Positions 54,701 through 64,000 of a DNA stretch of 64,000 bases are shown in pieces. Position numbers and translations under genes: made by a program. The DNA is taken from the NCBI GenBank assembly GCA_950097015.1, contig CATNEN010000030.1, positions 4,831,895 through 4,895,894 on the forward strand, in the 5' to 3' direction. Every line of letters begins with the position of its first letter. Within the stretch, counting starts at the first letter, position 1. This DNA is from Macrostomum hystrix. Lineage: Eukaryota > Animalia > Platyhelminthes. A model generated the notes under the pieces. The model was not told the DNA's origin, ran no database searches, and saw nothing but the letters and a program-made list of their open reading frames with translations.

Positions 54701-56837
54701 GCTAATTCAGCACAGAGTATTGGCGCTGATGGCAATTTGCTGGATTGAAAAAAGCCTTCACGTTTACCAACACTCACAGTGTGCAGTGCAGGGTGCAGTG
54801 CAGATGGCAATGCAGGAAAAACATCGAAGTGTGCGCTGTATATAAGTTCCGGCTAGCTTTTCTCATAAATCGTAGTTACTTGCTAAATAAGCACTTGAAA
54901 CAGGCTTTCACAGGTCTAGCTTCTTGCTTGACAATGAAGAGTTTTAAGAACAATTAAAGCACCTTTTACGCGCTGAAGAACAGCTTGGCGCGTGCTGCTT
55001 GCAAGGAGTGCGTTACGCTGCTCATTCAGCACAGAGTATTGGCGCTGATGGCAATTTGCTGGATTGAAAAAAGCCTTCACGTTTACCAACACTCACAGTG
55101 TGCAGTGCAGGGTGCAGTGCAGATGGCAATGCAGGAAAAACATCGAAGTGTGCGCTGTATATAAGTTCCAGCTAGCTTTTCTCATGAATCGTAGTATGTT
55201 GCTAAAGAAGCACTTAAAACTGGCTTTCACAGGTCTAGCTTCTTGCTTGATAATGTAGATTTTTAAGAACAATTAAAGCACATTTTACGTGCTCAAGAAC
55301 AGCTTGGCAAGTGCTGCTTGCAAGGAGTGCGTTTCGCTACTAATTCAGCACAGAGTATTGGCGCTGATGGCAATTTGCTGGATTGAAAAATGTGTTTAAC
55401 ATTACCAGCACTAACAGTGTGCAGGAAGATGGCAATGCAGGGCCGACATCGAGCTTGCGCTACACATCAGTGCAGGGTGCAGTGCAGATGGCAATGCAGG
55501 AAAAACATCGAAGTGTGCGCTGTATATAAGTTCCAGCTAGCTTTTCTCATGAATCGTAGTATGTTGCTAAAGAAGCACTTAAAACTGGCTTTCACAGGTC
55601 TAGCTTCTTGCTTGATAATGTAGATTTTTAAGAACAATTAAAGCACATTTTACGCGCTCAAGAACAGCTTGGCAAGTGCTGCTTGCAAGGAGTGCGTTTC
55701 GCTGCTAATTCAGCACAGAGTATTGGCGCTGATGGCAATTTGCTGGATTGAAAAATGTGTTTAACATTACCAGCACTAACAGTGTGCAGGAAGATGGCAA
55801 TGCAGGGCCGACATCGAGCTTGCGCTACACATAAGTTCCAGCTAGCTTTTCTCATGAATCGTAGTTTGCTGCTTTATTAGCACTTAATACAGGCTTTCAC
55901 AGGTCTAGCTTCTTGCTTGACAATGAAGAGCTTTAAGAACAATTAAAGCACCTTTTACGCGCTGAAGAACAGCTTGGCGCGTGCTGCTTGCAAGGAGTGC
56001 GTTACGCTGCTCATTCAGCACAGAGTATTGGCGCTGATGGCAATTTGCTGGATTGAAAAAAGCCTTCACGTTTACCAACACTCACAGTGTGCAGTGCAGG
56101 GTGCAGTGCAGATGGCAATGCAGGAAAAACATCGAAGTGTGCGCTGTATATAAGTTCCAGCTAGCTTTTCTCATGAATCGTAGTATGTTGCTAAAGAAGC
56201 ACTTAAAACTGGCTTTCACAGGTCTAGCTTCTTGCTTGATAATGTAGATTTTTAAGAACAATTAAAGCACATTTTACGTGCTCAAGAACAGCTTGGCAAG
56301 TGCTGCTTGCAAGGAGTGCGTTTCGCTACTAATTCAGCACAGAGTATTGGCGCTGATGGCAATTTGCTGGATTGAAAAATGTGTTTAACATTACCAGCAC
56401 TAACAGTGTGCAGGAAGATGGCAATGCAGGGCCGACATCGAGCTTGCGCTACACATCAGTGCAGGGTGCAGTGCAGATGGCAATGCAGGAAAAACATCGA
56501 AGTGTGCGCTGTATATAAGTTCCAGCTAGCTTTTCTCATGAATCGTAGTATGTTGCTAAAGAAGCACTTAAAACTGGCTTTCACAGGTCTAGCTTCTTGC
56601 TTGATAATGTAGATTTTTAAGAACAATTAAAGCACATTTTACGCGCTCAAGAACAGCTTGGCAAGTGCTGCTTGCAAGGAGTGCGTTTCGCTGCTAATTC
56701 AGCACAGAGTATTGGCGCTGATGGCAATTTGCTGGATTGAAAAATGTGTTTAACATTACCAGCACTAACAGTGTGCAGGAAGATGGCAATGCAGGGCCGA
56801 CATCGAGCTTGCGCTACACATAAGTTCCAGCTAGCTT
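48730..56837. repeat. Satellite domain B: 305-bp A' monomers mixed with diverged 319-bp monomers (AAAAAAGCCTTCACG and TGCAG-expanded types) and 365-bp chimeric monomers; local periods 1256, 943, 1308 and 989 bp
   Basis: 319-bp spacing at 53118/53437/53756; 943 = 305 + 2 x 319 (51780/52723); 1308 and 989 between chimeric monomers; no 49-bp duplications seen. Confidence 0.93.
56826..56837 (+). repeat. Left target-site duplication TCCAGCTAGCTT (12 bp)
   Basis: Identical to 62891-62902. Satellite sequence stops exactly after it. The first T of the right copy could belong to the tail, giving an 11-bp TSD. Confidence 0.95.
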
Positions 56838-57071
56838 GCTCGCACCGGCGGGACACAGTGCCTGTGAGGTATGAGTCAGTCCAGGCCCACGGGCTTTGGT
56901 CTGCGATGCCTCACACCTGCAGCCGTTTTTTGAGCAGGCCTGGCAGGAAGGAGACCTGTACCTTCGGGTGCAGGAATCCCTCCAACGCTGTCCCGTCAGC
57001 TGACCCATGGGTACACGTCCCGCGAGTGTTCAAGGCTGACCCTAGGGCAGCCGGACAGAATGGGCAACAGC
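56838..57071 (+). ncRNA. HDV-like (CPEB3-type) self-cleaving ribozyme at the element 5' end, with a long J1/2
   Basis: P1 GCUCGC 56838-56843 / GCGAGU 57022-57027 (G1.U wobble). P2 CCCAU 57004-57008 / AUGGG 57060-57064, extended by GCUG 56999-57002 / CAGC 57068-57071. P3 GGG 57009-57011 / CCC 57019-57021. L3 UACACGU 57012-57018. P1.1 AC 57013-57014 / GU 57028-57029. P4 GGCUG 57034-57038 / CAGCC 57048-57052. J4/2 C57056-A-G-A. Folded by hand; activity untested. Confidence 0.85.
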
Positions 57072-57106
57072 GCTGGATGACCCATCCAGGGCCTCCGGCC
57101 AAACTG

Positions 57107-57265
57107 GGTACCTCTAGCCCCGGCTGGAGGGAAAGGTGTCACCCTTTGACCTTAACAGGGTATGTGGCTTGTCCGCAATTTTCGTGCACCTGTGCGTGAT
57201 CAGGTACCTCTGGCTACGGCCCTGAGGGACAGGTGTCACCCTTTGACCTTAACAGGGTTTGCGGC
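57107..57265 (+). repeat. Two ~62-bp direct repeats in the LINE 5' UTR (57107-57168, 57203-57265) with an identical 28-bp core
   Basis: AGGTGTCACCCTTTGACCTTAACAGGGT at 57134-57161 and 57231-57258; both copies begin GGTACCTCT. Confidence 0.92.
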
Positions 57266-57506
57266 CAGCCCGCAGGCCTCGGCGCCGGCTCAATGGCACC
57301 CTCCAATGTCCCAGTGTTGACCGTGCTGATGGACGCTTGGCCAGGGAGTAGTCTGGTCTCTTACGGTTCCTCCCGGTGGTCCTGGCATCCCACCCCGGGT
57401 TGTAACTTGTCTTTTTTGGCTGCCCCCGCTCAGTTTTGGGATCGCGGCTGAGCGGGTTATTCCTGCCTGTGTCTACAGGAAGCCCCTCTCTTCATTGCAG
57501 CTTTCA

Positions 57507-59054
57507 ATGGCTTCTAGCCCTTCAACTGCTCCGGCCGAGGACACCATGGTGCCTGAGGCCATACACGCTGCGGCGCCCGGGCTAGCTGGCCCCGCGACCG
57601 CCACAAATGCCGCGCTGCCCAACTCGCGCGATGACCGGGGCGCTAAGCGCTCCACCACCTCTGGAGCGGCAAAACGCCGTAGGCGCATGCTGGCCCACGG
57701 CACGTCGGCTCCATTGACCAAGGACCAGGCCCAGGCCAGAGGGGCCGAAGGGGCTCTGCCTAGGGCGGGGGCTGGGGCGGGGGGCCTTGTGCCTCCTGCC
57801 CAGGCTCCTGCACGGGGCGGAGCCCACGACGCCCCGAGGCCAGGGTCGCGGGCCAAGGAGGGCCCGGCGCCCATCCGGACGGCTGCCCGGCCCGAAGGAG
57901 AAGCGGAGGCGGAGGGCCCTGTGCCCACCGCCGACGCAGATCCCGAGGGTGGGGACGCCACCGGACAGGGCCCGGGACCACAAGCTACCTACGCCGCCAT
58001 CGCACGTAGGCAACCTGCCGTCATCATCACCGGCAGAGACGGGAAAAGGCTGAGCAGCGAACAGCTCAGCGACATTTGCCGCAACATAGATGCTATGTTG
58101 TGGCAACTTCAACTGAAGGGCGAGCCCCTGGCGGTCGGCGCAAGCGCTACCAGGGAATCGTGCTTCGTCGTCTGGCCCGGCGATGCGGAATCGGGGCGGC
58201 GGCTCCTCGAGTTGCTGCCCACGCAGAGCTGGGCGGCTGGCCTCGAGTTCCTACGGGAGAACGAGCCACCAAAGACCAAGCGACACCGTATCTTCGTCCC
58301 GGCGAAAAGTGTCGTCACCAGCGCTGAGGACCTCCGCAGGGGCCTCATCGCGATGAACCGGGAGCTGCCGACAGCGGGCCTGATCGTGCACCGCACGATC
58401 CTGCGCCCCGACGGCACCGGTTTCACCGCCATTCTGGGCCTGTCCGAGCAATGGACACGCCGCTACCCAGATGGCGCCAACATTTGCATTGGTCTGTGGA
58501 AGACCAAAATCTTCGCCTTCGAGGCGGATAAAACCCGAGGTCAGACCGGGCCCACCACCGTACCGGCCAATGAAGGGTCCTCGGACCCCAAGGCTGGGAC
58601 TGGGGGCAGGGCCCAGTCGTCCCGCCAAAAAAGGCCAGAGCGTGCCATCGCTGGCAGCTCTGAGCGTCGCCCCGCGCGTGTCACAAAGCGCCGGGGCCTT
58701 CTCCAGCGGGCCTCCGAGGTGGTGCGAACCGCCAAGATGGCCCAGCTGCGCGCTGAGATGCGCGGTGGCCCACCGGGGCAGGCGCCGCAACCAAGGGCTA
58801 CGGGGGAGGCCTCAGAGGTGCCCAGCTCCATCGAGCAGGGCCCTTCGAGCGCCCCTCCCACGGCCCAGGGAGCGGTGTCGGCTCCAGTTGAGGGCGACTC
58901 TGGGCCTGGGCTCGGGGCCGGGGGCGGGGACTGGGCGGCTGACGCCGTCGAGTTCCCGTCTCCGGCTCGGGGCCTGGGCACGGAGGAGCCCATGGCTACC
59001 GACATCGACCCGGAGGAGGAGGACCGCCTTCTGGCTGGGTCCCCCTCCAAGTAG
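57507..59054 (+). CDS. LINE ORF1 protein (515 aa from the first ATG), LOA-type / DUF4780-like nucleic-acid-binding protein
   Basis: Open frame ending in TAG 59052-59054. Low-complexity Ala/Pro/Gly termini, basic KRSTTSGAAKRRRR cluster, and a central globular region (TYAAIA...LSSEQL...RHRIFVP...MNRELPT...LGL...IGLWKTKIF) resembling LOA-clade ORF1 from memory. No CCHC knuckle. The track start 57495 is a TTG; an in-frame ATG with a stronger context (ACCATGG) is at 57546. Confidence 0.85.
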   Translation: MASSPSTAPAEDTMVPEAIHAAAPGLAGPATATNAALPNSRDDRGAKRSTTSGAAKRRRRMLAHGTSAPLTKDQAQARGAEGALPRAGAGAGGLVPPAQAPARGGAHDAPRPGSRAKEGPAPIRTAARPEGEAEAEGPVPTADADPEGGDATGQGPGPQATYAAIARRQPAVIITGRDGKRLSSEQLSDICRNIDAMLWQLQLKGEPLAVGASATRESCFVVWPGDAESGRRLLELLPTQSWAAGLEFLRENEPPKTKRHRIFVPAKSVVTSAEDLRRGLIAMNRELPTAGLIVHRTILRPDGTGFTAILGLSEQWTRRYPDGANICIGLWKTKIFAFEADKTRGQTGPTTVPANEGSSDPKAGTGGRAQSSRQKRPERAIAGSSERRPARVTKRRGLLQRASEVVRTAKMAQLRAEMRGGPPGQAPQPRATGEASEVPSSIEQGPSSAPPTAQGAVSAPVEGDSGPGLGAGGGDWAADAVEFPSPARGLGTEEPMATDIDPEEEDRLLAGSPSK

Positions 59055-59066
59055 ACCTCTGCCTGC

Positions 59067-62000
59067 ATGATGATCCCCGGAATATCATGTCTGCAAGTTA
59101 ACACCCAGCACTGCGTGGCAGCATCAGTCAATCTGATGCGCACGACAGAGCGCATGATGCCGGGCCTTGTACTTGTGCAGGAGCCCTGGCTATCAAAGAA
59201 CAAGCCAAGCAACATTCCTGCTGGCTATGACTGCTTCTGCATGGCAGACTCTGTCCGCCCTAGATCACTGATCTATGCCGCAAAAGCCTTAAATGCGTGG
59301 ATGAGACCCGATCTCTCTAACGGGGACATCTGCGTCATCCAATCTGCACACATTGTGCCTAACAAGTTGACCCTCGTGGCATCCGCCTACCTGGCAGGCG
59401 ACGCCCCCGTGGTTAGCGATACCCTCGTCGCCCTCTGTGAATTCGCCAGGGCACGAAACTTCGAGCTGCTCCTCGCGGGAGATGTAAACTCGCATCACAC
59501 CCACTGGGGTAGCTCAAAAATCAATGACCGCGGCGAAGAGCTCCTGGCCTTCGTCAGCGGCACGCCTCTAAACTTCTGCAATGTGGGCAACACGCCCACT
59601 TTCGACAATGGGCGGTGGGCTGAGGTGCTTGACGTCACCCTGGCCTCACCCGGCATCCTCCCAAGGGTGCTGGGGTGGGAGGTGTGGGAGACCGAAAGCT
59701 CGCTCTCGGACCACCGTTTCATCCGTTTCAACATCGGCACCCCCGATAAGAAGCAAAAGCCTATTTGGAGGCGTAATGTCAGAAATACCGACTGGCCCGC
59801 GTTCAGCCAAAAGCTGCATGAGGGCCTTCGGGATTCTGACCCCTCCATGGCCATGGAAACCACGCAGGACCTGGATGGAGTGGCTGCCCTGCTGGGCGGC
59901 GCCATCACAGAGGCCTACGAAATGGCTTGCCCGCTCAAAGCCTACAAAGGCAAAAAATCGGCCCCCTGGTGGAACCCCGAGCTCGGAGTCCTAAGACGCC
60001 GAGCTAAGGCTCTCCAGAGGAAGCTGAAAACCTCGCACGACCCTGATGACAAAGAGGCCTATACTCGCGCCATCCACGAGTTTAAGGGCCGGGTCAGAAG
60101 GGCAAAAGCGGACAAGTGGCGACAATACTGCGAAGGGCTTGAGGGCTCGCGGCCCACGGCCCGCGTGGTAAAGGCGCTCACCAACGACCGCTTCTCCAAG
60201 CTCTCATCGATTAAAAAGCCGGACGGCTCGATCACTGAGCGCCCGGAGGAAACGCTCGAGCTTATGCTAGGGCATTTCTTCCCGAGTGTACCGGCGCACT
60301 TCGGCCCAGACGACCACTCGCGTGGAGGTCAGGGCCTGGCTCAGTCACTCGTTACGAATGACCGCATCGTTCGCGCGGCTAAGTCATTCAATCCTTTTAA
60401 AGCACCTGGGCCAGATGGTATATATCCGGCCTTTCTGCATGAAGCGGTTAAAAATGGCCGCTTCCTCCATCTCCTCTGCAGACTTCTACGGGCCTGCATC
60501 GTGCTGGGCTACGTACCAGCGCGGTGGCATGAAGCCCGGGTCGTCTTCATCCCGAAGCCCGCCAAAGGCGACTATCGCTCGGTCAAGTCTTATCGCCCGA
60601 TAAGCTTGACTTCCACCTGCCTCAAGCTCATGGAAAGACTGGTGCTCTGGCGCCTTCTTACTGTAGAGCTAGGGCGGGCCCCGCTCTCACCAAACCAGCA
60701 CGCCTTTCGGGCGGGCCGGTCCACGGAGAGCGCCCTCCACTGCATTGTGGAGACTCTCGAGAAGGCAGTGCTGGGCAGCGGTTTTGCCCTGGCTGTTTTC
60801 CTTGATATTGAGGGGGCCTTCGATAACGTTATTTTCGAAGCCTTTGAGAAGGCCCTGGTTTCCAGGGCCACTCACCCCCACCTCGTCCGTTGGGTCATGT
60901 ACATGATCCGGAATCGCCACGTGGTGGCCCACCTCGAAGGCAGGGTGCTCTCGGCACCTGTCCTAAAAGGAGGGCCCCAAGGTGGCGTCCTCACCCCACT
61001 GCTGTGGAATCTCGTCATGGATGAGCTGCTAAAAAGCACTCGGCCTGACCCAGTCCTGAAGGTGGGATATGCCGACGATGTGACCGCCATCTGCGCGGGC
61101 CCCTCGGCGGAAACCACCAGGGACCTCATTCAGGGCTTTATCAACAGGGCGGTGCGCTGGGCGGACCAATGCGGGCTCCGACTCTCTGAGTCCAAGACCG
61201 TTGCGGTTATGTTTACCAGCAGGCTGCGCTGGACCATTGAGCCTCTGACTCTCTATGGCAAGAATATTGCCATGGAAAAGCAGGTCCGGTGCCTTGGTAT
61301 CCTGCTAGACCATAGGCTTAACTGGACCCCGCACATTACCACAAAGGCCAAGAGGGCCCTGGCCATTCTGGCGCAAGTCAGGCGAGCCGTGGGCACCACT
61401 TGGGGGCTAACCCCCAAAAACCTTTGGTGGATTTACACGGCGATCATTAGACCGTCAGTCGCTTACGCTGGCCTCATCTGGGCCAGTGCCATGAGCATCC
61501 AGAAAAACCTGGAGGCGCTTTATAGGGTGCAGGGCAGAGCCTGTCGCATGACGCTGGGCGCCCCACCCTCCACTCCCTTTGAAGGCATGAACGCTTTCCT
61601 CAACGCTACACCCATTGACATTTTTGTTAAGGGGGAAGCGGCAAAGTCCACCCGTCGTCTCCTTGATGCGGGTGTATCCTTCCAGAATTCGCGAGCCTTC
61701 TCGAAGCGCTCCCTTCTGCCCCACTCTGACCTCTGCCTGAAAACTCTGGGCGAGTGCGGAGGGCTCACCATCCTTTCGGACGGGGCCCCGGCCACTTTAC
61801 TCCGGAGCCACAGGTACAAAGTCAGCATCTTCCCTCGTAATGAGGTAAAGGACTGCTGGGATGACCCCGCAGTCCACTGTTACACTGACGGCTCCCTGAT
61901 GAACGGTAAATCGGGATTCGGGGTGTGCGTCGCCTCGGGTGGCGAGGTCCTCTGGACCCACTCCCAACACTGTGGCAAGAGCTCAAGCGTTTTCCAAAAC

Positions 62001-62771
62001 GAAATGCTCGCCATCAGCTTCTGTGCGGCTGAGCTGCGCCAGAGGCAGCTGGCTGGTCGGAGGATCTTTTTTCACTCCGACAGTCAAGCAGCCCTCAAGG
62101 CCCTCAGTCGCTGCACCTCTCGCTCCAGAACCACCTTGGACTGCAACACCCAGTTAAACGGTTTGGCGCAGTCTAACAAGGTGGAGCTGATGTGGATCCC
62201 TGGGCACGCCGGGCTCACAGGGAATGAGATGGCGGACGAGCTTGCAAAGGCTGGAGCAGCCAGCTCCCTGATGGGCCCGGGCCCGGAATCCCCGATCCCC
62301 GCCTCCGTTGTCAACTCCAGCATCAACCACTGGATGGAGACCCAGCACCGGAGGAGGTGGTCCAGCACCCTGAACTGTCGCCAGTCCAGGGCTGCGGTGC
62401 CAACCCCCTCTAGTAACCTGCGTAAGGCCTTACTCAGGCTAAACCGCAGAGACCTGAGAGCAGTCACCATGGCCCTTTCGGGACATGGCTGCTTCACCAG
62501 ACACCGCTACCTCCAAGGCCACGTGCCTGAGGAAACGTGTCCTTTCTGCTGCTCCGGCCGTGAAAACGCCGAGCATTTCATTTGCCACTGCCCGGCCTTC
62601 ACCCGGGCTAGGCTAAAACACCTCGGGCCGGCACCGACTCTTGCCGAAGCCTGCTCGCCCGAGAACATCCCTCAGCTCGCCCACTTCCTCCGGGATACCG
62701 GCCGAGCTGATTTCTTCCCAGCCTATGGCGAGGAAGATCGCGCGGCGGAACCGACCGACGGACCACCCTGA
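59067..62771 (+). CDS. LINE ORF2 polyprotein (1234 aa): APE endonuclease - reverse transcriptase - RNase H - CCHC zinc finger
   Basis: APE motifs VQEPW, GDVNSHH, LDVT, SDH. RT motifs [35 protein letters not shown] and YADD (61068-61079). RNase H motifs YTDGS (from 61881), [28 protein letters not shown]2CX8HX4C at 62538-62591. Confidence 0.98.
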
Positions 62772-62872
62772 GCGGCACCGCCTCGCTGGAGGCCGTCTGG
62801 CTGCCAGGGGTTAGCGATATGGGCGGCAATAGCCGCCTCCTCGCTGCGTCCGTCATGGAGGCCCCCTGCCGC
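62772..62872 (+). other. LINE 3' UTR, highly base-paired
   Basis: AGCGGCA 62771-62777 / TGCCGCT 62867-62873 closes the region. Internal hairpins: GCCTC/GAGGC 62780-62793 and GGCGGC-AATA-GCCGCC 62822-62837. Confidence 0.75.
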
Positions 62873-62890
62873 TAAGTCAAGTAAGTCAAG
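62873..62890 (+). repeat. 3' terminal tandem repeat tail (TAAGTCAAG)2, no poly(A)
   Basis: TAAGTCAAG at 62873-62881 and 62882-62890, immediately before the right TSD. Confidence 0.9.
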
Positions 62891-62902
62891 TCCAGCTAGC
62901 TT
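62891..62902 (+). repeat. Right target-site duplication TCCAGCTAGCTT
   Basis: Identical to 56826-56837; the interrupted monomer resumes in register. Confidence 0.95.
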
Positions 62903-64000
62903 TTCTCATGAATCGTAGTTTGCTGCTTTATTAGCACTTAATACAGGCTTTCACAGGTCTAGCTTCTTGCTTGACAATGAAGAGCTTTAAGAACAATTAA
63001 AGCACCTTTTACGCGCTGAAGAACAGCTTGGCGCGTGCTGCTTGCAAGGAGTGCGTTTCGCTGCTCATTCAGCACAGAGTATTGGCGCTGATGGCAATTT
63101 TCTGGATTGAAAAAAGCCTTCACGTTTACCAACACTCACAGTGTGCAGTGCAGTGTGCAGTGCAGATGGCAATGCAGGAAAAACATCGAAGTGTGCGCTG
63201 TATATAAGTTCCGGCTAGCTTTTCTCATAAATCGTAGTTACTTGCTAAATAAGCACTTGAAACAGGCTTTCACAGGTCTGGCTTCTTGCTTGACAATGAA
63301 GAGTTTTAAGAACAATTAAAGCACCTTTTACGCGCTGAAGAACAGCTTGGCGCGTGCTGCTTGCAAGGAGTGCGTTACGCTGCTCATTCAGCACAGAGTA
63401 TTGGCGCTGATGGCAATTTTCTGGATTGAAAAAAGCCTTCACGTTTACCAACACTCACAGTGTGCAGTGCAGGGTGCAGTGCAGATGGCAATGCAGGAAA
63501 AACATCGAAGTGTGCGCTGTATATAAGTTCCAGCTAGCTTTTCTCATGAATCGTAGTATGTTGCTAAAGAAGCACTTAAAACTGGCTTTCACAGGTCTAG
63601 CTTCTTGCTTGATAATGTAGATTTTTAAGAACAATTAAAGCACATTTTACGCGCTCAAGAACAGCTTGGCAAGTGCTGCTTGCAAGGAGTGCGTTTCGCT
63701 GCTAATTCAGCACAGAGTATTGGCGCTGATGGCAATTTGCTGGATTGAAAAATGTGTTTAACATTACCAGCACTAACAGTGTGCAGGAAGATGGCAATGC
63801 AGGGCCGACATCGAGCTTGCGCTACACATAAGTTCCAGCTAGCTTTTCTCATGAATCGTAGTTTGCTGCTTTATTAGCACTTAATACAGGCTTTCACAGG
63901 TCTAGCTACTTGCTTGACAATGAAGAGTTTTAAGAACAATTAAAGCACCTTTTACGCGCTGAAGAACAGCTTGGCGCGTGCTGCTTGCAAGGAGTGCGTT
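62891..64000. repeat. Satellite array resumes (domain B monomer types) and runs off the window end
   Basis: The A'/319/319/A' monomer order matches that near 51.9-52.9 kb. Confidence 0.98.

What the first reader, a model, noticed from the sequence alone, without database searches (positions are those of the whole stretch)
56838..57071. Complete HDV/CPEB3-type ribozyme whose cleavage site is the exact 5' end of a LOA-like LINE
Every element of the nested double pseudoknot is present in order, starting at the first non-satellite base. G1.U wobble and 6-bp P1; 5+4-bp P2; GGG/CCC P3; L3 UACACGU (one change from CPEB3 UUCACGU as I recall it); a fully Watson-Crick P1.1 (AC/GU instead of CC/GG, i.e. 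compensated); P4 hairpin; J4/2 C-A-G-A fitting C-N-R-A with candidate catalytic C57056. HDV-like ribozymes are established at the 5' ends of R2, RTE and ingi/L1Tc elements. They cut 5' of G1, which here is the TSD boundary, so the copy is truly full length. Whether this family or ribozyme is already described needs a search.
Basis: partly seen in the sequence, partly recalled or inferred. Interest (0 to 1): 0.88.

Follow-up and report, generated by a model that had tools for sequence, protein, structure and literature searches.

The report
HDV-like ribozyme heading a flatworm LINE
The first 234 bases of an intact jumping gene (a LINE) in a flatworm genome fold into the hepatitis-delta-type self-cutting RNA shape, and relatives keep that shape through matched base changes, so it is a well-supported but expected new example of a known way for LINEs to trim their own RNA.

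Summary
A generic HDV-type descriptor hits only this site in the window. It gave 0 hits in 60 whole-window shuffles and 1 in 300 shuffles of the LINE.

Rfam finds nothing, but comparison supports the fold. A relative (L121, ORF2 62% identical) is a contig that starts exactly at its own G1. It keeps P1, P1.1, P2 and the closing stem of the 155-nt J1/2 domain through about ten double compensatory changes, with no broken pairs. Two further relatives and contigs from two other organisms keep P2, P3, L3 and a C four bases before the P2 3' strand.

At least four other insertion sites, with unrelated upstream DNA, begin at the same base.

The best reading is an HDV-like self-cleaving ribozyme of the "large" type. 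A structured J1/2 (P1.2-like) domain holds P1 and P2 together, and cleavage releases LINE RNA from read-through transcripts. Cleavage itself is untested, and the "LOA" label is untested.

This is a new member of a known kind. First readers of this scan noted the same ribozyme type at other copies in this genome.

The parts
56826..56837 (+). 5' copy of the 12-bp target-site duplication TCCAGCTAGCTT, inside the satellite
   Evidence: Identical 12-mer at 62891-62902. The satellite sequence continues on both sides.
56838..62890 (+). Full-length non-LTR retrotransposon: 5' UTR, ORF1, ORF2 (APE-RT-RNase H), short 3' UTR ending in AAGTCAAG repeats
   Evidence: ORFs, Pfam domains, boundaries. ORF1 and ORF2 are closest to Macrostomum lignano proteins.
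56838..56843 (+). P1 5' strand GCUCGC. The predicted cleavage is 5' of G56838.
   Evidence: Pairs 6/6 with 57022-27. In L121 the strands are GCCUGC/GCAGGC, with two double compensations.
56844..56998 (+). J1/2 peripheral domain. A 9-bp closing stem (56847-55 with 56989-97, P1.2-like) carries three hairpin arms, one capped by UUCG (56963-66).
   Evidence: Folds alone at -78.1 kcal/mol, z -4.5. L121 has the same architecture and a covarying closing stem.
56999..57008 (+). P2 5' strand: GCUG, a bulged A, then CCCAU
   Evidence: Pairs with 57060-64 and 57068-71. Covaries in L121, L122, L123 and in an organism C contig.
57009..57021 (+). P3 (GGG/CCC) enclosing L3 UACACGU
   Evidence: P3 is invariant, and L3 keeps U1, C5, G6 and U7 in four sequences.
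57022..57027 (+). P1 3' strand GCGAGU
57028..57029 (+). P1.1 3' strand GU, pairing with A57013 and C57014 of L3
   Evidence: In L121 the pairing is CU/AG, so both pairs are doubly compensated.
57034..57052 (+). P4 hairpin (GGCUG...CAGCC)
   Evidence: The sequence differs in every relative but always forms a hairpin. In organism E, 57049 A>G turns an A-U pair into G.U.
57053..57059 (+). J4/2 GGACAGA with the candidate catalytic C57056
   Evidence: A C four bases before the P2 3' strand is present in all four sequences. Variants at 57057 and 57058 occur in other organisms, but none at 57056 was listed.
57060..57071 (+). P2 3' strand: AUGGG, CAA, then CAGC
57073..57089 (+). Conserved small hairpin just after the ribozyme, with an invariant ACCCA loop motif
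   Evidence: Consensus fold of four sequences; two stem pairs show compensatory change. An organism C contig reads CCGGA...UCCGG there.
57507..59054 (+). ORF1, counted from the first ATG in frame
   Evidence: Homologues include an M. lignano protein that its source names DUF4780.
59067..62771 (+). ORF2: endonuclease, reverse transcriptase, RNase H
62891..62902 (+). 3' copy of the target-site duplication

Best explanation
The first 234 nt of this LINE RNA form an HDV-like self-cleaving ribozyme of the 'large' type.

The 73-nt core (56999-57071) holds P2, P3/L3, the P1 3' strand, P1.1, P4 and J4/2 with C57056. The P1 5' strand is the element's first six bases. A 155-nt independently folding J1/2 domain brings that strand to the core. 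Its 9-bp closing stem sits 3 nt from P1 and 1 nt from P2.

The element lies in a satellite. When it is transcribed as part of a longer read-through RNA, the ribozyme is expected to cut 5' of G56838 and remove all upstream sequence. The retrotransposition template then starts at base 1, which explains why copies at different sites begin at the same base.

Shown here: the fold, its conservation and covariation, and the shared 5' end. Inferred: Mg2+-dependent cleavage, C57056 as the catalytic base, and the role in releasing the RNA.
For: - Geometry and pairing are as described.
- The descriptor hits only this site in the window. Shuffles gave 0 hits in 60 whole-window shuffles and 1 in 300 shuffles of the LINE.
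- L121 (ORF2 62% identical) is a contig that starts at its own G1.
- L121 pairs against the window: P1 GCCUGC/GCAGGC against GCUCGC/GCGAGU; P1.1 CU/AG against AC/GU; P2 CUCAGA/UCUGAG and GCCG/CGGC against CCCAU/AUGGG and GCUG/CAGC.
- L121's closing stem is GCAGGGCGC/GCGCUCUGC against the window's GGCGGGACA/UGUCCCGUC.
- L122 and L123 keep the core with further P2 and P4 variants and the invariant C.
- An abundant organism C contig has P2 CCCAGA/UCUGGG and GCCG/CGGC.
- An organism E contig spans the whole ribozyme. The core changes listed for it are a P4 loop base, an A-U to G.U change in P4, and J4/2 CAGA to CAAA.
- At least four other junctions with unrelated upstream DNA start at 56838 or 56837 (table 7).
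- The nested part of the HDV fold scores -101.2 kcal/mol before adding P2 (about -11 or better) and P1.1. The best pseudoknot-free fold scores -108.8.
- Structured J1/2-P1.2 domains with short linkers activate known large HDV-like ribozymes (PMC4908430).
- HDV-like ribozymes cut at the 5' end of R4, Dong, baggins, L1Tc and RTE elements (PMC3774820, PMC6765202).
Against:
- No Rfam HDV-type model matches the window or the relatives, even at E up to 10 for the window and up to 5 for the relatives.
- Only two sequences (the window and L121) include the P1 5' strand, so P1 covariation rests on one comparison.
- Bases 2-6 can instead pair locally with bases 11-15, and that pairing also shows one compensation.
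- A uniform 5' end would equally follow from an internal promoter starting at +1.
- The J4/2 bases after the C vary (AGA, UGA, UGC, GUG), and two relatives lack the final A.
Confidence: 0.82

Rival explanations
1. This is a conserved 5'-UTR structure without catalysis, for example an internal promoter, translation or packaging element. The uniform 5' end would then come from transcription starting at +1, and the HDV-like look would be partial convergence.
For: - Uniform 5' ends fit an internal promoter as well as a ribozyme.
- There is no Rfam hit.
- A competing local hairpin at bases 2-15 is also conserved.
- L1Tc combines a promoter and a ribozyme in the same bases (PMC3383444), so a promoter role cannot be excluded.
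Against: - The two-base-pair P1.1 pseudoknot changes on both sides in both pairs.
- P2 covaries in five versions.
- L3 keeps the U...CG.U pattern, and a C stays fixed 4 nt before the P2 3' strand.
- This exact topology has no known role other than the ribozyme.
Confidence: 0.08
2. The ribozyme is real, but in part of the family the working P1 5' strand is the internal one next to P2, which is the 3' strand of the J1/2 closing stem. Some members would then cut about 150 nt inside the element, and the terminal P1 would be secondary.
For: - In L123 the internal strand GCUCGC lies 2 nt before P2 and pairs 6/6 with the P1 3' strand GCGAGC (-9.6 kcal/mol).
- L121 and L122 give 5 pairs there.
Against: - In the window the internal strand pairs with the P1 3' strand at only -1.9 kcal/mol, against -8.2 for the terminal strand.
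- The terminal pairing together with the closing stem is far more stable than the alternative set in both full sequences.
- DNA copies begin at the terminal G1, not at the internal site.
Confidence: 0.05
3. This is a chance resemblance produced by a permissive motif with a long variable spacer in G+C-rich sequence.
For: The spacer of up to 200 nt gives many chances for a 6-nt P1 match. The descriptor was written after seeing the example.
Against: - Shuffles gave 0 hits in 60 whole-window shuffles and 1 in 300 shuffles of the LINE.
- The P1 strand falls on the element's first base.
- The same architecture, with compensatory changes, recurs in relatives.
Confidence: 0.02

Closest known systems
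[quoted passage not shown]
   Same: Same double-pseudoknot topology, with the cleavage site at or near the element's first base. Same proposed role in freeing the element RNA from a longer co-transcript (PMC3774820, PMC6765202, PMC3185411).
   Different: - The host is different: a Macrostomum-type flatworm. No paper linking Macrostomum and ribozymes was found.
- This element family has an ORF1 plus an APE-RT-RNase H ORF2.
- There is no sequence-level match to any Rfam model.
- Schistosome LINEs are reported to use twister variants instead (PMC8501958).
drz-Agam-2 type 'large' HDV-like ribozymes with a J1/2-P1.2 peripheral domain
   Same: A stable helix within J1/2, joined by short linkers to P1 and to an extended P2, holds P1 and P2 together (PMC4908430). 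Here there is a 9-bp closing stem with 3-nt and 1-nt linkers, and a 5+4-bp P2.
   Different: - The domain here is a 155-nt multi-arm junction (a closing stem plus three hairpins) rather than a single helix.
- P2 is interrupted by an internal loop.
- No homology to the Agam-2 sequences was detected.
R2 ribozymes with large J1/2 loops
   Same: A long J1/2. Eickbush and co-workers proposed that large J1/2 loops arise by repeated 5' extension with duplication of the P1 strand (PMC3774820). The resemblance here between the P1 strands and the closing-stem strands fits that idea.
   Different: This element is not rDNA-specific, and it has two ORFs and an AP endonuclease. Cleavage is at the element's own first base, not inside upstream target sequence.
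Mammalian CPEB3 ribozyme
   Same: Same fold class. The relatives' P1.1 has one G-C pair plus a U-U, which I recall being the case for CPEB3 too.
   Different: CPEB3 is a single-copy intronic ribozyme of about 68 nt with a short J1/2. Rfam's CPEB3 model does not match here. The L3 similarity was recalled from memory, not tested.

Membership tests
HDV-like self-cleaving ribozymes | Nested double pseudoknot in the order P1 - P2 - P3/L3 - P1 - P1.1 - P4 - J4/2 - P2 | tested here: met
   All strands are present in order and pair fully. It is the only descriptor hit in the window.
HDV-like self-cleaving ribozymes | P1 of 6-7 bp starting at the cleavage site with G1 (G.U or G-C) | tested here: met
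   GCUCGC/GCGAGU with G1.U. L121 has GCCUGC/GCAGGC with G1-C.
HDV-like self-cleaving ribozymes | Short G+C-rich P3 closing an L3 of about 7 nt that supplies the P1.1 pairs | tested here: met
   GGG/CCC with a 7-nt L3. P1.1 is AC/GU in the window and CU/AG in L121.
HDV-like self-cleaving ribozymes | Conserved cytosine in J4/2 (the catalytic C) | tested here: met
   A C lies 4 nt before the P2 3' strand in the window, L121, L122 and L123. Its chemical role is not testable here.
HDV-like self-cleaving ribozymes | Helices supported by compensatory changes in relatives | tested here: met
   Between the window and L121 alone there are about ten double changes across P1, P1.1, P2 and the closing stem, with no broken pairs. 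Further P2 variants appear. P1 rests on only two sequences.
HDV-like self-cleaving ribozymes | Site-specific Mg2+-dependent self-scission giving a 5'-OH at G1 | not testable with these tools
   Only assembled contigs were served, so RNA ends cannot be read.
Rfam HDV-type families (HDV_ribozyme, CPEB3, drz-Agam, HDV-F-prausnitzii) | Match to a curated covariance model | tested here: not met
   No hit at gathering score or at E up to 10 in the window, and none at E up to 5 in L121-L123. These models carry no pseudoknots and none has this 155-nt insertion.
Large HDV-like ribozymes with a J1/2-P1.2 domain | Stable helix in J1/2 next to P1 and P2, with short linkers and an extended P2 | tested here: met
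   9-bp closing stem at -15.1 kcal/mol, linkers of 3 and 1 nt, P2 of 5+4 bp. The stem covaries in L121.
LOA clade of non-LTR retrotransposons | ORF1 plus an ORF2 with the domain order APE - RT - RNase H | tested here: met
   Pfam finds Exo_endo_phos, RVT_1 and RNase_H in that order. Several clades share this order.
LOA clade of non-LTR retrotransposons | Placement of the reverse transcriptase within the LOA clade in a tree with reference elements | not tested
   No clade-labelled reference sequences were available in the tools, and the protein hits carry no clade names.

The most novel reading that the evidence does not exclude
The ribozyme may have grown from a compact ancestor by a 155-nt 5' extension that duplicated the P1 strand, and it may still work as a two-state device.

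The 5' strand of the closing stem mimics the P1 3' strand, and the 3' strand of the closing stem mimics the P1 5' strand. The RNA can therefore choose between two sets of pairings. One set is P1 plus the closing stem, which cuts at base 1. The other is a 5' hairpin plus a compact internal ribozyme, which would cut about 150 nt in; in L123 this internal pairing is perfect.

This would give some family members a choice of cleavage site, or a folding switch that times cleavage.
Probability: 0.15. Interest if true: 0.6.

Novelty: new member of a known kind. Interest (0 to 1): 0.4.

Why it matters
It extends ribozyme-processed LINEs to a free-living flatworm lineage. It also gives a well-defined natural example of an HDV-like ribozyme whose P1 strand is delivered by a large multi-arm peripheral domain. 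That makes it useful for testing how peripheral domains activate the core, and how 5' extensions shift cleavage sites during LINE evolution.

For annotation, the ribozyme marks the true 5' end of full-length copies of this family. It does not change the general picture, because HDV-like ribozymes at LINE 5' ends are well established.

Tried and rejected
- **Rfam:** searched at gathering score and at permissive E-values on the window and on three relatives. No HDV-type hit.
- **Exact-pattern scans:** metagenome, viral and prokaryotic genome collections were scanned with core patterns. They returned only chance matches, and BLAST showed none is homologous.
- **Protein search with the translated 5' UTR ORF**, intended to fish out other copies: nothing.
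- **Distant ORF1/ORF2 relatives** (L282, L283, L284, L285): their upstream regions are unrelated, two of them A+T-rich, with no evident HDV-like motif by eye. They were not pursued.
- **Pseudoknot-free MFE folding** of the whole 234 nt does not return the HDV fold, as expected, and was not used as evidence either way.
- **The 151-aa ORF at 56744-57199** starts in the satellite, has no Pfam domain and no homologue. It was rejected as a gene.
- **Clade assignment** was looked for in the literature without result.

Full report
**What is there**

The window holds a 6,053-bp non-LTR retrotransposon at 56838-62890 on the + strand. It sits inside an array of satellite repeats. Perfect 12-bp target-site duplications (TCCAGCTAGCTT) flank it at 56826-37 and 62891-902. 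ORF1 is intact (first in-frame ATG at 57507, ending 59054). ORF2 (59067-62771) is also intact and has endonuclease, reverse transcriptase and RNase H domains in that order. The closest named proteins are from the flatworm Macrostomum lignano. Intact ORFs and perfect duplications point to a young, full-length copy.

**Check of the observation**

- P1: GCUCGC (56838-43) with GCGAGU (57022-27), 6 bp, G1.U.
- P2: CCCAU/AUGGG plus GCUG/CAGC.
- P3: GGG/CCC around L3 UACACGU.
- P1.1: A57013-U57029 and C57014-G57028.
- P4: a hairpin at 57034-52.
- J4/2: ends C57056-A-G-A.

The core occupies 56999-57071. The P1 5' strand lies 155 nt upstream, at the very first bases of the element.

I wrote a generic HDV-type descriptor that allows up to 200 nt in J1/2. 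It finds this site alone on both strands of the window. It found no hits in 60 dinucleotide shuffles of the window and 1 hit in 300 shuffles of the LINE sequence. The descriptor was written after the fact, so the figure is indicative, but the match is clearly not a routine chance event.

**Database models**

Rfam gives no HDV-type hit at gathering score, or at E up to 10 on the 451 bases around the site. It gives none in the relatives either. This weighs little. Those models cover specific subfamilies, cannot encode pseudoknots, and none carries an insertion like this one.

**Comparative evidence**

Protein searches with ORF1 and ORF2 led to three homologous loci.

L121 is a 6,492-nt Logan contig with ORF2 62% identical, and it starts exactly at its own predicted G1. 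Its helices compare with the window as follows:

| Helix | Window | L121 | Change |
|---|---|---|---|
| P1 | GCUCGC/GCGAGU | GCCUGC/GCAGGC | two pairs changed on both sides; G.U becomes G-C |
| P1.1 | AC/GU | CU/AG | both pairs changed on both sides |
| P2 inner | CCCAU/AUGGG | CUCAGA/UCUGAG | compensated |
| P2 outer | GCUG/CAGC | GCCG/CGGC | compensated |
| P4 | GGCUG...CAGCC | different sequence | still a hairpin |

L122 and L123 are contigs cut off inside J1/2, so they lack the P1 5' strand. They keep GGG/CCC and have L3 UUCCCGU and UUCUCGU. Their P2 is CCUCAGA/UCUGAGG and CCCAAA/UUUGGG, and each has its own P4 hairpin.

A C lies four bases before the P2 3' strand in all four sequences. 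The three bases after it vary: AGA, UGC, UGA and GUG.

Contigs from public runs add more.
- An abundant element of a second organism has P2 CCCAGA/UCUGGG and GCCG/CGGC.
- A contig from a third organism spans the whole ribozyme with 16 differences. Three of the listed ones fall in the core: a P4 loop base, an A-U to G.U change in P4, and J4/2 CAGA to CAAA.

No pair is broken in any helix I could read. The weak point is P1, which rests on two sequences.

**The 5' end**

Contigs from two runs of the same organism, and one contig from another organism, join position 56838 (one of them 56837) to four different, unrelated upstream sequences (table 7). Full-length copies therefore begin at the same base wherever they land.

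L121's contig also begins at its G1 while running about 530 nt past its 3' end into flanking DNA. That shows a repeat boundary or an RNA end at G1, and I cannot tell which. A fixed 5' end fits ribozyme processing, but taken alone it also fits an internal promoter.

**The J1/2 domain**

Bases 56844-56998 fold on their own at -78.1 kcal/mol (z -4.5). The fold is a 9-bp closing stem (GGCGGGACA/UGUCCCGUC) bearing three hairpins, one of them capped by UUCG. L121 folds the same way, with a covarying closing stem GCAGGGCGC/GCGCUCUGC.

The stem lies 3 nt from P1 and 1 nt from P2. That is the arrangement shown to activate large HDV-like ribozymes by holding P1 and P2 together (PMC4908430).

Variants among genomic copies fall mostly in this domain. 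Those I checked keep its pairs; for example, 56960 A>G gives a G.U pair.

**Energetics and alternative pairings**

With P1 and P3 imposed and the pseudoknot strands kept free, the structure scores -101.2 kcal/mol. P2 adds about -11 or better, and P1.1 adds a little more. The best pseudoknot-free fold scores -108.8. The HDV fold is therefore competitive.

Two alternative pairings exist.
- Bases 2-6 can pair with bases 11-15.
- In L121, L122 and especially L123, the 3' strand of the closing stem can pair with the P1 3' strand. In L123 this pairing, GCUCGC/GCGAGC, is perfect.

In both full sequences the active set (P1 plus the closing stem) is much more stable: -23.3 against -8.5 kcal/mol in the window. 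The strand mimicry fits the published idea that large J1/2 loops arise by 5' extension with duplication of the P1 strand (PMC3774820). With so few sequences, this remains an idea.

**How it most likely works**

The element is transcribed as part of a longer RNA, here most plausibly read-through from the satellite. The J1/2 domain folds first and brings the first six bases to the core. The double pseudoknot then forms, and C57056 with a bound Mg2+ catalyses attack of the 2'-OH of the base before G56838. The upstream RNA leaves, and the LINE RNA starts at base 1 with a 5'-OH. Reverse transcription of that RNA gives DNA copies that begin at G1.

The fold, its conservation and the common 5' end are shown here. 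The chemistry and the biological role are inferred from the family.

**Comparison with what is known**

HDV-like ribozymes at LINE 5' ends are established for R2, R4/Dong, baggins, RTE and L1Tc (PMC3774820, PMC6765202, PMC3185411). Structured J1/2 domains are known from drz-Agam-2 (PMC4908430) and from R2. I found no paper linking Macrostomum with ribozymes. Schistosome LINEs are reported to use twister variants (PMC8501958).

This is therefore a new member of a known kind. Its distinguishing feature is an unusually large, multi-arm J1/2 domain.

The 'LOA' label was not tested. First readers of this scan flagged the same ribozyme type at other copies in this genome. Those notes were not used as evidence.

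Noticed in passing
window 57073-57089; L121 246-262; L122 164-180; L123 161-179: A small hairpin lies directly after P2. Its loop motif ACCCA is invariant and its stem covaries (CUGGAU/AUCCAG, CCGG/CCGG, CGCU/AGCG). It may be a further peripheral part of the ribozyme or a protein-binding site.
   Followed up: partly
window 57100-57280; L001 1-200: The 5' UTR carries a tandem duplication of a unit of about 100 nt (GGUACCUCU ... GGUGUCACCCUUUGACCUUAACAGGGU ...). L001 also shows two copies, and parts of the unit are conserved in L123.
   Followed up: no
L123 76-114: In this relative the 3' strand of the J1/2 closing stem reads GCUCGC, lies 2 nt before P2 and pairs perfectly with the P1 3' strand GCGAGC. 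A compact HDV-like ribozyme with an internal cleavage site could therefore form. The contig is cut off upstream, so its terminal P1 strand is unknown.
   Followed up: partly
window 56500-56837 and 62891-64000: The LINE sits in an array of satellite repeats with a period of roughly 300 bp. The insertion duplicated 12 bp of a satellite unit. Whether the satellite is transcribed, which would feed the ribozyme, is unknown.
   Followed up: no
window 62860-62890; L121 5950-5964: The 3' end is not a poly(A) tail. It is a short repeat, AAGTCAAG-TAAGTCAAG, and L121 ends in CTAAGTCAAAG, so the 3' terminal motif is conserved between families.
   Followed up: no
Read-laying run X11 (organism C), contig of 904 nt laid on window 57009-57059: A contig carrying a near-identical ribozyme core has a word depth of about 800, against 3-15 for the other contigs of that run. 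It points to a very abundant or highly expressed element with this core in another species.
   Followed up: no
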